Shown: piece by piece, positions 9,962 through 10,341 of the stretch
How the letters are laid out: each line of letters begins with the position of its first letter
Position numbering within the stretch: the stretch's first letter is position 1
NCBI RefSeq assembly: GCF_001194135.2
Contig: NC_069003.1
Location: forward strand, 5,021,548-5,064,472
Source: Octopus bimaculoides
Taxonomy: Eukaryota
DNA: 42,925 nucleotides
Reading direction: 5' to 3'
The notes under the pieces: generated by a model
Seen by the model: only the letters and a program-made list of their open reading frames with translations
What the model was told of the DNA's origin: nothing
Databases searched by the model: none
Made by a program: the position numbers and the translations under genes

Positions 9962-10341
9962 TTTATATATATATGGTGTCGCATGGCCCAAAATTACCGT
10001 GAATTTTTCTAGAGACACTTTCAAATTTATCAGAATATCGGATTGAAGATTTGGAATAGAGAAATTTTCATTCTCTTAACCAGGAAACGATCGTATCCGA
10101 TTAACTAAAGACTTGTTTTGTTTATGCTTTCCCCTCCGGTTTTGTTCTATGTGTGCCATAAATATCGCCATCGATTTAGAGAAAAATTTGTAGTTTAGAA
10201 TCAGTAGTTCTTTGACTGCTATTTCTAAATTTTCAGTATGTTGGAGAAGCAACTCAATGCTAATCCCTGTATATTTATGATTTTATATATATATGGTGTC
10301 GCATGGCCCAAAATTACCGTGAATTTTTCTAGAGACACTTT
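9962..10341 (+). repeat. 320-bp unit with terminal redundancy or tandem repeat running into a gap
   Basis: 9962-10021 is identical to 10282-10341 (60 bp, offset 320, same contig); the 871-N gap follows. Confidence 0.85.
10037..10101 (+). ncRNA. Putative type I hammerhead ribozyme
   Basis: Stem I ATCGGA (10037-42) / TCCGAT (10096-101). Core UUGAAGA (10043-49) and GAAA (10084-87). Stem II TTGG/CCAG with an extension AGAGAA/TTCTCT. Palindromic stem III ACG-AT-CGT. Cleavage triplet GUA, cut after 10095. Confidence 0.75.

What the first reader, a model, noticed from the sequence alone, without database searches (positions are those of the whole stretch)
9962..10341. Retrozyme-like 320-bp tandem unit carrying a type I hammerhead with palindromic stem III
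Seen: perfect 6-bp stem I (ATCGGA/TCCGAT), UUGAAGA...GAAA core, extended stem II, self-complementary ACGATCGT stem III with a 2-nt loop, and a GUA cleavage triplet. The unit restarts exactly 320 bp later with 60 identical bp before a gap whose nominal length would fit about three more units. Known: metazoan non-LTR retrozymes are ~170-400 nt tandem units with one type I HHR that yield circular RNAs, and palindromic stem III HHRs (newt satellite 2, PLE minimal HHRs) cleave as dimers. Inference: a cephalopod retrozyme able to release 320-nt monomers or circRNA. Position 3 is U rather than C (U3-G8 wobble), which may be a variant or a decay mutation. I do not know whether this family has been described.
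Basis: partly seen in the sequence, partly recalled or inferred. Interest (0 to 1): 0.85.

Follow-up and report, generated by a model that had tools for sequence, protein, structure and literature searches.

The report
Hammerhead-like ribozyme motif in tandem repeat
An AT-rich 320-base repeat in an octopus-like genome carries one near-consensus copy of a small self-cutting RNA motif (hammerhead ribozyme) of the kind found in animal "retrozyme" repeats. Only one imperfect copy can be seen before an assembly gap, so this is a plausible but unproven ordinary member of a known class.

Summary
The 60-bp restart at period 320 is exact and runs into an 871-N gap. The motif parses as a type I hammerhead of the minimal, dimer-dependent kind seen in Penelope-like elements (PLEs) and newt satellite 2. 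In 400 Mb of composition-matched random sequence the full feature set occurred once, about 2e-4 per window, so chance is unlikely.

The case is weaker than stated:
- Two conserved positions deviate: C3 is U, and the helix II closing pair is U.G instead of G10.1-C11.1.
- Rfam hammerhead models give no hit, even at E<=10.
- A 2-nt loop is sterically impossible, so monomeric helix III is 2 bp plus a GAUC loop.
- Only 1.19 units and one motif are visible.
- I could reach no other copy.

A 62-nt inverted repeat with (TA)n at its centre brackets the array and the gap. A separate dispersed repeat elsewhere in the window carries another minimal-hammerhead-like motif.

Best reading (about 0.55): a retrozyme or PLE-derived tandem repeat whose visible ribozyme copy is probably impaired. 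It would be a new member of a known kind, of modest interest.

The parts
9904..9965 (+). Left arm of a 62-nt inverted repeat that brackets the array and the gap
   Evidence: 78% complementary to 11213-11274; 0 of 300 shuffles reach the score
9964..9974 (.). (TA)5T run at the left array boundary, repeated at the unit junction 10284-10294
   Evidence: read directly
9962..10281 (+). Complete 320-nt repeat unit, 32.8% GC, no ORF longer than 68 aa
10037..10042 (+). Helix I, 5' strand (AUCGGA)
   Evidence: 6 Watson-Crick pairs with 10096-10101
10043..10049 (+). Core box 1, UUGAAGA (consensus CUGANGA; U at position 3)
10050..10083 (+). Helix II: unpaired U, then U.G U-A G-C G-C, a 3x3 internal loop, AGAGAA/UUCUCU, and a 7-nt loop
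   Evidence: pairing probabilities 0.998-0.999 for the two helix II pairs checked (10053-10081, 10060-10074)
10084..10086 (+). Core box 2, G12 A13 A14
10087..10094 (+). Helix III palindrome ACGAUCGU. As a monomer it forms 2 bp plus a GAUC loop; between two copies it forms an 8-bp duplex
10095..10095 (+). A17; the predicted cleavage is 3' of this base (GUA triplet)
   Evidence: inferred from hammerhead numbering; not tested
10096..10101 (+). Helix I, 3' strand (UCCGAU)
10282..10341 (+). First 60 nt of a second unit, identical to 9962-10021
10342..11212 (.). Assembly gap of 871 N. 9962-11217 is 1256 nt, or 3.9 units
11213..11274 (-). Right arm of the inverted repeat; it starts with TATAT directly after the gap
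   Evidence: arms plus (TA)n fold as a foldback, z = -6.2

Best explanation
This is a short tandem array of a non-coding, AT-rich 320-nt repeat, probably about four units long. It is inserted in the (TA)n centre of an older 62-nt foldback. Each unit carries one minimal type I hammerhead of the PLE / newt-satellite kind. In other words, it is a non-LTR retrozyme-like element derived from a Penelope-like-element pseudo-LTR (pLTR).

Inferred mechanism:
1. A multimeric + strand transcript pairs the palindromic helix III of neighbouring units into an 8-bp duplex.
2. Helix I forms in trans, giving a double hammerhead.
3. Each unit is cut after A10095, releasing 320-nt monomers with 5'-OH and 2',3'-cyclic phosphate ends.
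4. A cellular tRNA ligase could circularise these monomers.

The one visible copy has U3 and a U10.1.G11.1 pair, so it is probably a weakened or dead copy.

Shown here: the sequence anatomy, its improbability by chance, the in-silico dimer fold and the insertion context. Inferred: transcription, cleavage, circles, mobility and family membership.
For: - All core and helix elements are in the correct order and spacing.
- The full feature set is expected about 2e-4 times per window and about 10 times per 2.5-Gb genome under a Markov null. It also falls inside one of only two long-period repeats (160 and 320 bp) in the window.
- Two features not needed for my descriptor match those reported as emergent in PLE hammerheads: a nucleotide between A9 and 10.1, and a palindromic 15.2-16.2 plus loop 3 (PMC4209133).
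- Two copies, or a 402-nt tandem transcript, have the double hammerhead as their minimum-free-energy fold: -40.4 against 2 x -17.2 kcal/mol.
- Unit length (320 nt), 33% GC and lack of coding capacity fit non-LTR retrozymes (PMC7229834).
- A (TA)n boundary, an inverted-repeat context and a short-read assembly break are all described for PLE insertions (PMC8557442).
Against: - C3 is U, and G10.1-C11.1 is U.G. Both are among the most conserved hammerhead positions, and PMC4209133 lists G10.1-C11.1 as highly conserved in PLE hammerheads.
- There is no Rfam hammerhead hit even at E<=10.
- Only one motif and 1.19 units are visible.
- No second copy of the unit exists in the window or in 33.5 kb of O. 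vulgaris. None was found in the protein, metagenome, prokaryote or viral collections, which are poor in animal DNA.
- The 320-nt monomer is not strikingly structured: z = -1.3 linear, -2.0 circular.
- No PLE reverse transcriptase or GIY-YIG ORF is in the window.
- The null model is Markovian, and the number of windows the first stage screened is unknown.
Confidence: 0.55

Rival explanations
1. Chance look-alike. A local, recent tandem duplication of ordinary intergenic sequence, mediated by the (TA)n runs at both unit ends, happens to contain a hairpin-rich 65-nt stretch that resembles a hammerhead with one core mismatch.
For: - There are two deviations at conserved positions and no Rfam hit.
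- The looser descriptor gives about 1e-7 per nt-strand, so hundreds of such matches are expected per genome.
- The region's minimum-free-energy fold is one long hairpin, not the hammerhead fold: -17.2 against -11.8 kcal/mol.
- No other copies were found.
- The finding was selected after the fact.
Against: - With the palindromic helix III and helix II requirements the expectation drops to about 2e-4 per window. Co-location with a 320-bp repeat lowers it by roughly another two orders of magnitude.
- The extra nucleotide after A9 and the exact 8-nt palindrome are family-typical details, not free parameters (PMC4209133).
Confidence: 0.25
2. Not a tandem array. The 60-bp restart is either the second copy of a two-copy direct repeat (R-X-R, for example terminal repeats of some element) or a de Bruijn-graph loop / gap-edge artefact. 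The gap would then hold unrelated sequence. The hammerhead-like motif would be solitary and unable to dimerise.
For: - Only 1.19 units are seen, and the contig stops exactly 60 nt into the second copy.
- The window has 20 gaps, 19% N.
- TRF does not call the array.
Against: - The junction 10281|10282 is contiguous sequence within one contig, so reads must span it.
- The usual gap artefact duplicates sequence across the gap, not on one side of it.
- The distance 9962-11217 is 3.9 units, compatible with about four units within gap-size error.
Confidence: 0.1
3. A foldback or MITE-like DNA element. The 62-nt inverted repeats would be its termini and the 320-bp units its internal tandem repeats, as in bivalve MITE-like elements with internal satellite repeats (from my own knowledge). 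The hammerhead resemblance would be incidental.
For: - Significant 62-nt inverted repeats bracket the array and the gap.
- The arms alone fold into a stable foldback, z = -6.2.
Against: - The arms have no sharp ends or clear target-site duplication. Identity is highest mid-arm and decays outward.
- No other copy of the arms exists in the window or in L001.
- Both arms end in (TA)n at the array side, which fits insertion into a pre-existing foldback at least as well.
- This reading does not explain the hammerhead feature set.
Confidence: 0.1

Closest known systems
Metazoan non-LTR retrozymes (Cervera & de la Pena 2020, PMC7229834), including the ~350-390-bp mussel repeats
   Same: A tandem, AT-rich, non-coding unit of a few hundred bp with one type I hammerhead per unit, in a mollusc host phylum.
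   Different: Only 1.19 units and one motif are visible. The core has U3 and a U.G closing pair on helix II. Family status, RNA expression and circles are unknown. Invertebrate retrozyme hammerheads are reported to cleave efficiently as monomers, whereas this one would need a dimer.
Minimal hammerheads of Penelope-like elements (Cervera & de la Pena 2014, PMC4209133)
   Same: An extra nucleotide between A9 and 10.1, a long helix II, no loop 1 / loop 2 tertiary motif, a palindromic helix III, and predicted dimer dependence. The (TA)n and inverted-repeat insertion context resembles that of PLEs (PMC8557442).
   Different: G10.1-C11.1 is not kept. U3 is paired with G8, not the reported U3-A8 covariation. 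No PLE ORF is nearby, and the 871-nt gap is too small for one. Helix I is 6 bp, longer than the 4-5 bp typical of those motifs.
Newt / salamander satellite 2 hammerhead (HHR_Amex1/2, ~330-350-bp repeats; PMC7229834)
   Same: About 330-bp tandem units, a very weak palindromic helix III, and efficient cleavage expected only as a double hammerhead.
   Different: The amphibian motifs keep the consensus core and the loop 1 / loop 2 contacts, and occur in about 1e5 copies. None of this is shown here.
Dispersed minimal-hammerhead-like repeat in the same window (13128-13295, 23370-23501, ~6600-6700, all on the - strand) and in O. vulgaris (L001 6640-6801)
   Same: GAAACG...GUA, an extra nucleotide after A9, a palindromic helix III (ACGU), and box 1 one mismatch from consensus.
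   Different: It is unrelated in sequence to the 320-nt unit, dispersed rather than tandem, about 170 nt with a microsatellite tail, and it keeps G10.1-C11.1.

Membership tests
Hammerhead ribozyme, type I | Core box 1: C3 U4 G5 A6 N7 G8 A9 | tested here: not met
   The sequence is UUGAAGA at 10043-10049, so position 3 is U. U3.G8 could still wobble-pair. From my own knowledge, C3 substitutions are strongly deleterious in vitro.
Hammerhead ribozyme, type I | Core box 2 (G12 A13 A14), the A15.1-U16.1 pair, and H17 at the cleavage site | tested here: met
   GAA 10084-10086, A10087-U10094, A10095
Hammerhead ribozyme, type I | Three helices around the core, with helix I open and helices II and III capped | tested here: met
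   Helix I has 6 Watson-Crick bp and helix II has 4+6 bp. Helix III is only 2 bp plus a GAUC loop as a monomer, or 8 bp as a dimer.
Hammerhead ribozyme, type I | G10.1-C11.1 pair closing helix II | tested here: not met
   U10051 (or U10050) pairs with G10083 in every register.
Hammerhead ribozyme, type I | Match to the curated covariance models (Rfam hammerhead families) | tested here: not met
   No hit at the gathering score, or at E<=10 on 442 nt and 96 nt. The models also miss the dispersed minimal-hammerhead-like family, so this is weak evidence.
Hammerhead ribozyme, type I | Site-specific self-cleavage | not testable with these tools
   Requires in vitro transcription of monomer and dimer constructs.
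PLE-type minimal (dimeric) hammerhead | Unpaired nucleotide between A9 and 10.1 | tested here: met
   One of the three U at 10050-10052 is unpaired. The feature is listed in PMC4209133.
PLE-type minimal (dimeric) hammerhead | Palindromic 15.2-16.2 and loop 3, allowing a double hammerhead | tested here: met
   ACGAUCGU is a perfect palindrome. The cofold and the 402-nt tandem transcript both give the double hammerhead as the minimum-free-energy fold.
PLE-type minimal (dimeric) hammerhead | Location in the pseudo-LTR of an element encoding RT and a GIY-YIG endonuclease | tested here: not met
   No such ORF is in the window. The only RT fragments are LINE-like, at 7921-8330(-) and 25435-25708(+). 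The 871-nt gap is too short for a PLE.
Non-LTR retrozyme | Head-to-tail tandem units of about 150-450 bp | tested here: inconclusive
   1.19 units at period 320 are visible and the rest is in the gap. 9962-11217 is 3.9 units.
Non-LTR retrozyme | Low GC content and no coding capacity | tested here: met
   32.8% GC. The longest ORF is 68 aa, and its translation has no relatives among 5.8 billion protein clusters.
Non-LTR retrozyme | A complete type I hammerhead in at least two consecutive units (criterion of 10.64898/2026.07.22.740005) | not testable with these tools
   The second motif would lie at about 10357-10421, inside the gap. The visible motif is not canonical.
Non-LTR retrozyme | A multi-locus family in the genome | tested here: inconclusive
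   No other copy is in the window or in 33.5 kb of O. vulgaris. No animal genome collection was available.
Non-LTR retrozyme | Expression as linear and circular monomer RNA | not testable with these tools
   No transcriptome data were available.
Foldback / MITE-like element with internal tandem repeats | Terminal inverted repeats with defined ends and a target-site duplication | tested here: inconclusive
   A 62-nt, 78% inverted repeat is present, but it has no sharp termini or clear duplication.

The most novel reading that the evidence does not exclude
Octopods carry a previously undescribed retrozyme lineage whose hammerhead uses a U3.G8 wobble and a non-G-C helix II closing pair, yet still cleaves as a double hammerhead. 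It would yield abundant 320-nt circular RNAs. These, together with the dispersed minimal-hammerhead-like repeat seen three times in this window, would form a large ribozyme-bearing fraction of cephalopod genomes.
Probability: 0.1. Interest if true: 0.55.

Novelty: new member of a known kind. Interest (0 to 1): 0.3.

Why it matters
If real, this would extend ribozyme-bearing tandem retroelements (retrozymes) to cephalopods. It would also add a natural core variant (U3.G8, U10.1.G11.1) that could be assayed for dimer-dependent cleavage. Type I hammerheads in short tandem repeats are already known across most animal phyla, including molluscs. The gain is therefore taxonomic and incremental, unless the variant core proves active or the RNA circles prove abundant. 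The practical value is a defined, testable cleavage site (after 10095) and a clear prediction for what the assembly gap should contain.

Tried and rejected
- Rfam covariance models gave no hammerhead hit on the whole window at gathering score, or on 442 nt and 96 nt around the motif at E<=10. Only noise was returned.
- I looked for other copies by translating all unit ORFs from a synthetic multimer and searching 5.8 billion protein clusters. There were none.
- Degenerate hammerhead and exact unit or arm patterns found 0 matches in the metagenome, prokaryotic-genome and viral collections. Searches were syntax errors.
- I tried to reach the orthologous locus through the neighbouring LINE fragment. 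The O. vulgaris locus L001 shares only the LINE copy and some SINEs, and is not collinear.
- The left flank is not a degenerate extra unit: 265 of 300 shuffles score as well.
- The unit is not related to the right flank or to the dispersed minimal-hammerhead-like family.
- There is no tRNA-like or SINE head in the unit.
- The bacterial promoter/terminator scan is irrelevant for a eukaryote and was empty.
- The idea that the 320-nt monomer is a highly stable rod was rejected: z is only -1.3 to -2.0.
- Literature searches joining hammerhead or retrozyme with octopus, squid or cephalopod found nothing relevant apart from Naiad PLE remnants in cephalopods. A search for octopus satellite DNA was uninformative.

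Full report
**What is in the sequence.**
The window is a gap-rich draft: 20 gaps, 19% N, 36% GC. A LINE fragment at 7690-8339 is 86% identical at the DNA level to a copy on Octopus vulgaris chromosome OX597825.1. The best named protein hit for its translation is from O. vulgaris. An octopod or close relative is therefore a reasonable source.

At the reported site every literal statement holds.
- 9962-10021 equals 10282-10341 (60/60, spacing 320). The contig then runs into an 871-N gap at 10342-11212.
- On the + strand the parse is: helix I AUCGGA 10037-10042 with UCCGAU 10096-10101; box 1 UUGAAGA 10043-10049; helix II 10050-10083; G12 A13 A14 10084-10086; palindrome ACGAUCGU 10087-10094; A17 at 10095.
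- Helix I is open and helices II and III are capped, so the topology is type I.

**Corrections to the observation.**
- A hairpin loop of 2 nt cannot form. As a monomer, helix III is A-U and C-G plus a GAUC tetraloop, and its predicted pairing probability is 0.001.
- The monomer's minimum-free-energy fold (-17.2 kcal/mol) is one long hairpin that sequesters core bases. The hammerhead fold scores -11.8 kcal/mol.
The consensus pair G10.1-C11.1 is highly conserved.
- Helix II is 4 bp after one unpaired U, then a 3x3 internal loop, then 6 bp.
- Rfam's hammerhead models do not match at the gathering score, or at E<=10 even on a 96-nt search space. They also miss a second hammerhead-like family in the window, so this negative carries limited weight.
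- The tandem claim rests on 1.19 units, and TRF does not report the array.

**Is it chance?**
I wrote a descriptor with a 6-bp Watson-Crick helix I, CUGANGA with at most 1 mismatch, GAAA, A15.1-U16.1 and H17. I ran it on sequence simulated from the window's dinucleotide frequencies.
- With a loose helix III, 30 Mb gave 3 hits as good as the candidate. That is about 1e-7 per nt-strand, 0.007 per window, and hundreds per 2.5-Gb genome.
- Requiring the compact palindromic helix III and at least 4 bp in helix II, 400 Mb gave 1 hit. That is about 2.5e-9 per nt-strand, about 2e-4 per window, and on the order of ten per genome.
- The motif also lies inside one of only two long-period repeats in the window (periods 160 and 320 bp), which covers about 1% of the sequence.

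Chance is therefore unlikely, though not excluded. The null is Markovian, real genomes are richer in hairpins, and I do not know how many windows were screened.

**Features that point to a real hammerhead lineage.**
Cervera and de la Pena (PMC4209133) list traits that emerged in PLE hammerheads without being part of their search descriptor:
- a nucleotide between A9 and 10.1;
- a conserved G10.1-C11.1;
- palindromic 15.2-16.2 and loop 3.

The candidate has the first and third but not the second. They also describe metazoan type I motifs as having a 6-bp helix I and a helix III of 1-2 bp capped by a 2-4-nt palindromic loop. That is exactly the monomer form seen here.

Two copies cofold into the classical double hammerhead, with an 8-bp ACGAUCGU duplex and helix I formed in trans. 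The dimer scores -40.4 kcal/mol against -34.4 for two monomers. The same architecture is the minimum-free-energy fold of a 402-nt tandem transcript.

The unit is 320 nt and 32.8% GC. It has no ORF above 68 aa and no protein relatives. This matches the description of non-LTR retrozymes (PMC7229834).

- A 62-nt inverted repeat (9904-9965 and 11213-11274; 78% complementary; 0 of 300 shuffles reach the score) brackets the array and the gap.
- Both arms end in (TA)n on the array side, and the unit junction is also (TA)5T.
- Joined without the array, the arms plus (TA)n fold into a long foldback: -29.5 kcal/mol with DNA parameters, z = -6.2.
- The left flank is not a degenerate unit, so the array starts at about 9962.
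- 9962-11217 is 1256 nt, or 3.9 units. This is compatible with four units within gap-size error.

The simplest reading is insertion of the array into the (TA)n centre of an older foldback. PLEs are reported to favour microsatellite targets, including (TA)n. They are also reported to form tandem and inverted arrangements and to break short-read assemblies (PMC8557442). This is consistent but not diagnostic.

**What could not be obtained.**
The unit and the arms have no other copy in the window or in the 33.5-kb O. vulgaris locus. The searchable collections hold essentially no cephalopod DNA, and pattern and ORF-based searches were empty. There is therefore no copy-number estimate, no covariation analysis, no second hammerhead and no RNA evidence. 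The 320-nt monomer folds only modestly better than shuffles: z = -1.3 linear and -2.0 circular.

**Mechanism and verdict.**
Most likely (about 0.55) this is a retrozyme-like, PLE-pLTR-derived tandem repeat. Its multimeric + strand transcripts would be cut after A10095 by double hammerheads formed between adjacent units. The monomers released could then be ligated into circles by a cellular tRNA ligase, as shown for other animal retrozymes (PMC7229834).

The visible copy has U3 and U10.1.G11.1, so it is probably impaired. Natural core variants are known but rare and usually slower (PMC7151607), and the covariation reported in PLE hammerheads is U3-A8, not U3-G8 (PMC4209133).

The rivals are:
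- a chance look-alike inside an ordinary (TA)n-mediated duplication (about 0.25);
- a two-copy direct repeat or assembly loop rather than an array (about 0.1);
- a foldback or MITE-like element with internal repeats (about 0.1).

Membership in 'hammerhead' fails two sequence criteria, and membership in 'retrozyme' is untestable here. The claim 'works like a dimeric PLE/newt-type hammerhead repeat' is better supported than 'is an active retrozyme'.

**Novelty.**
Type I hammerheads in short tandem repeats are described for most animal phyla, including molluscs. The library I could search holds no paper linking hammerheads or retrozymes to cephalopods, apart from a note on Naiad PLE remnants. If real, this is a new member of a known kind. 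Interest is modest at 0.3.

**Side observation.**
The relaxed scan also picked up a dispersed repeat of about 170 nt. It occurs at window 13128-13295, 23370-23501 and about 6600-6700, all on the - strand, and at O. vulgaris L001 6640-6801.
- Its conserved block is CTTT-CTGTAGA-A-GAGC-GTAG-GCTC-GAAACGT-A-AAAG.
- It has an extra A after position 9, a G10.1-C11.1 pair, a 4-bp helix II, a loop-less ACGU helix III, and a microsatellite tail about 120 nt downstream.
- Box 1 differs among copies, and none is exactly CUGANGA.
- It is unrelated in sequence to the 320-nt unit.
- Four copies in about 70 kb suggest a very abundant family. It deserves its own genome-wide check.

Noticed in passing
window 13128-13295(-), 23370-23501(-), about 6600-6700(-); L001 (O. 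vulgaris OX597825.1) 6640-6801(+): A dispersed repeat family of about 170 nt with a PLE-type minimal-hammerhead-like block: CTTT CTGTAGA A GAGC GTAG GCTC GAAACGT A AAAG. It has an extra A after position 9, a G10.1-C11.1 pair, a loop-less palindromic helix III (ACGU) and a microsatellite tail. Box 1 varies between copies and is never exactly CUGANGA. Four copies in about 70 kb imply a very abundant family shared by two octopod sequences. Rfam does not detect it.
   Followed up: partly
window 9904-9965 and 11213-11274: A 62-nt inverted repeat (78% complementary) with (TA)n at its inner ends brackets the repeat array and the gap. Without the array it would be a stable foldback (z = -6.2). No other copy is in the window or in L001.
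   Followed up: yes
window 7690-8339(-), ORF 7921-8730(-): The C-terminal part of a LINE-type reverse transcriptase, running into an (ACAT)n microsatellite. It is 86% identical at the DNA level to a paralogous copy in O. vulgaris, and the best named protein hit is from O. vulgaris. I used it to place the window in an octopod-like genome.
   Followed up: yes
window 11351-11459(+), 14151-14239, 34498-34585(-); L001 30335-30473, 30893-30948: Copies of a SINE-like repeat (…GGGATCGACAAAATAAGTACCAGC…) lie just right of the locus and elsewhere. The only Rfam gathering-level hit in the window is a tRNA-like stretch at 34762-34823 (29.5 bits). ARAGORN does not call it, so it is probably a SINE head.
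   Followed up: partly
window 25435-25708(+): A second RT-tail-like ORF fragment (…CRICQQQNETIDHVVSMCSLLAP…) is cut by the gap at 25709-26169. It follows an (ATA)30 run translated as poly-N.
   Followed up: no
whole window, e.g. gaps at 16013, 17533, 22255, 27648, 31946: Many of the 20 gaps directly abut microsatellites ((TA)n, (TC)n). Gaps in this assembly therefore tend to mark simple or tandem repeats. The gap at 10342 fits that pattern.
   Followed up: partly
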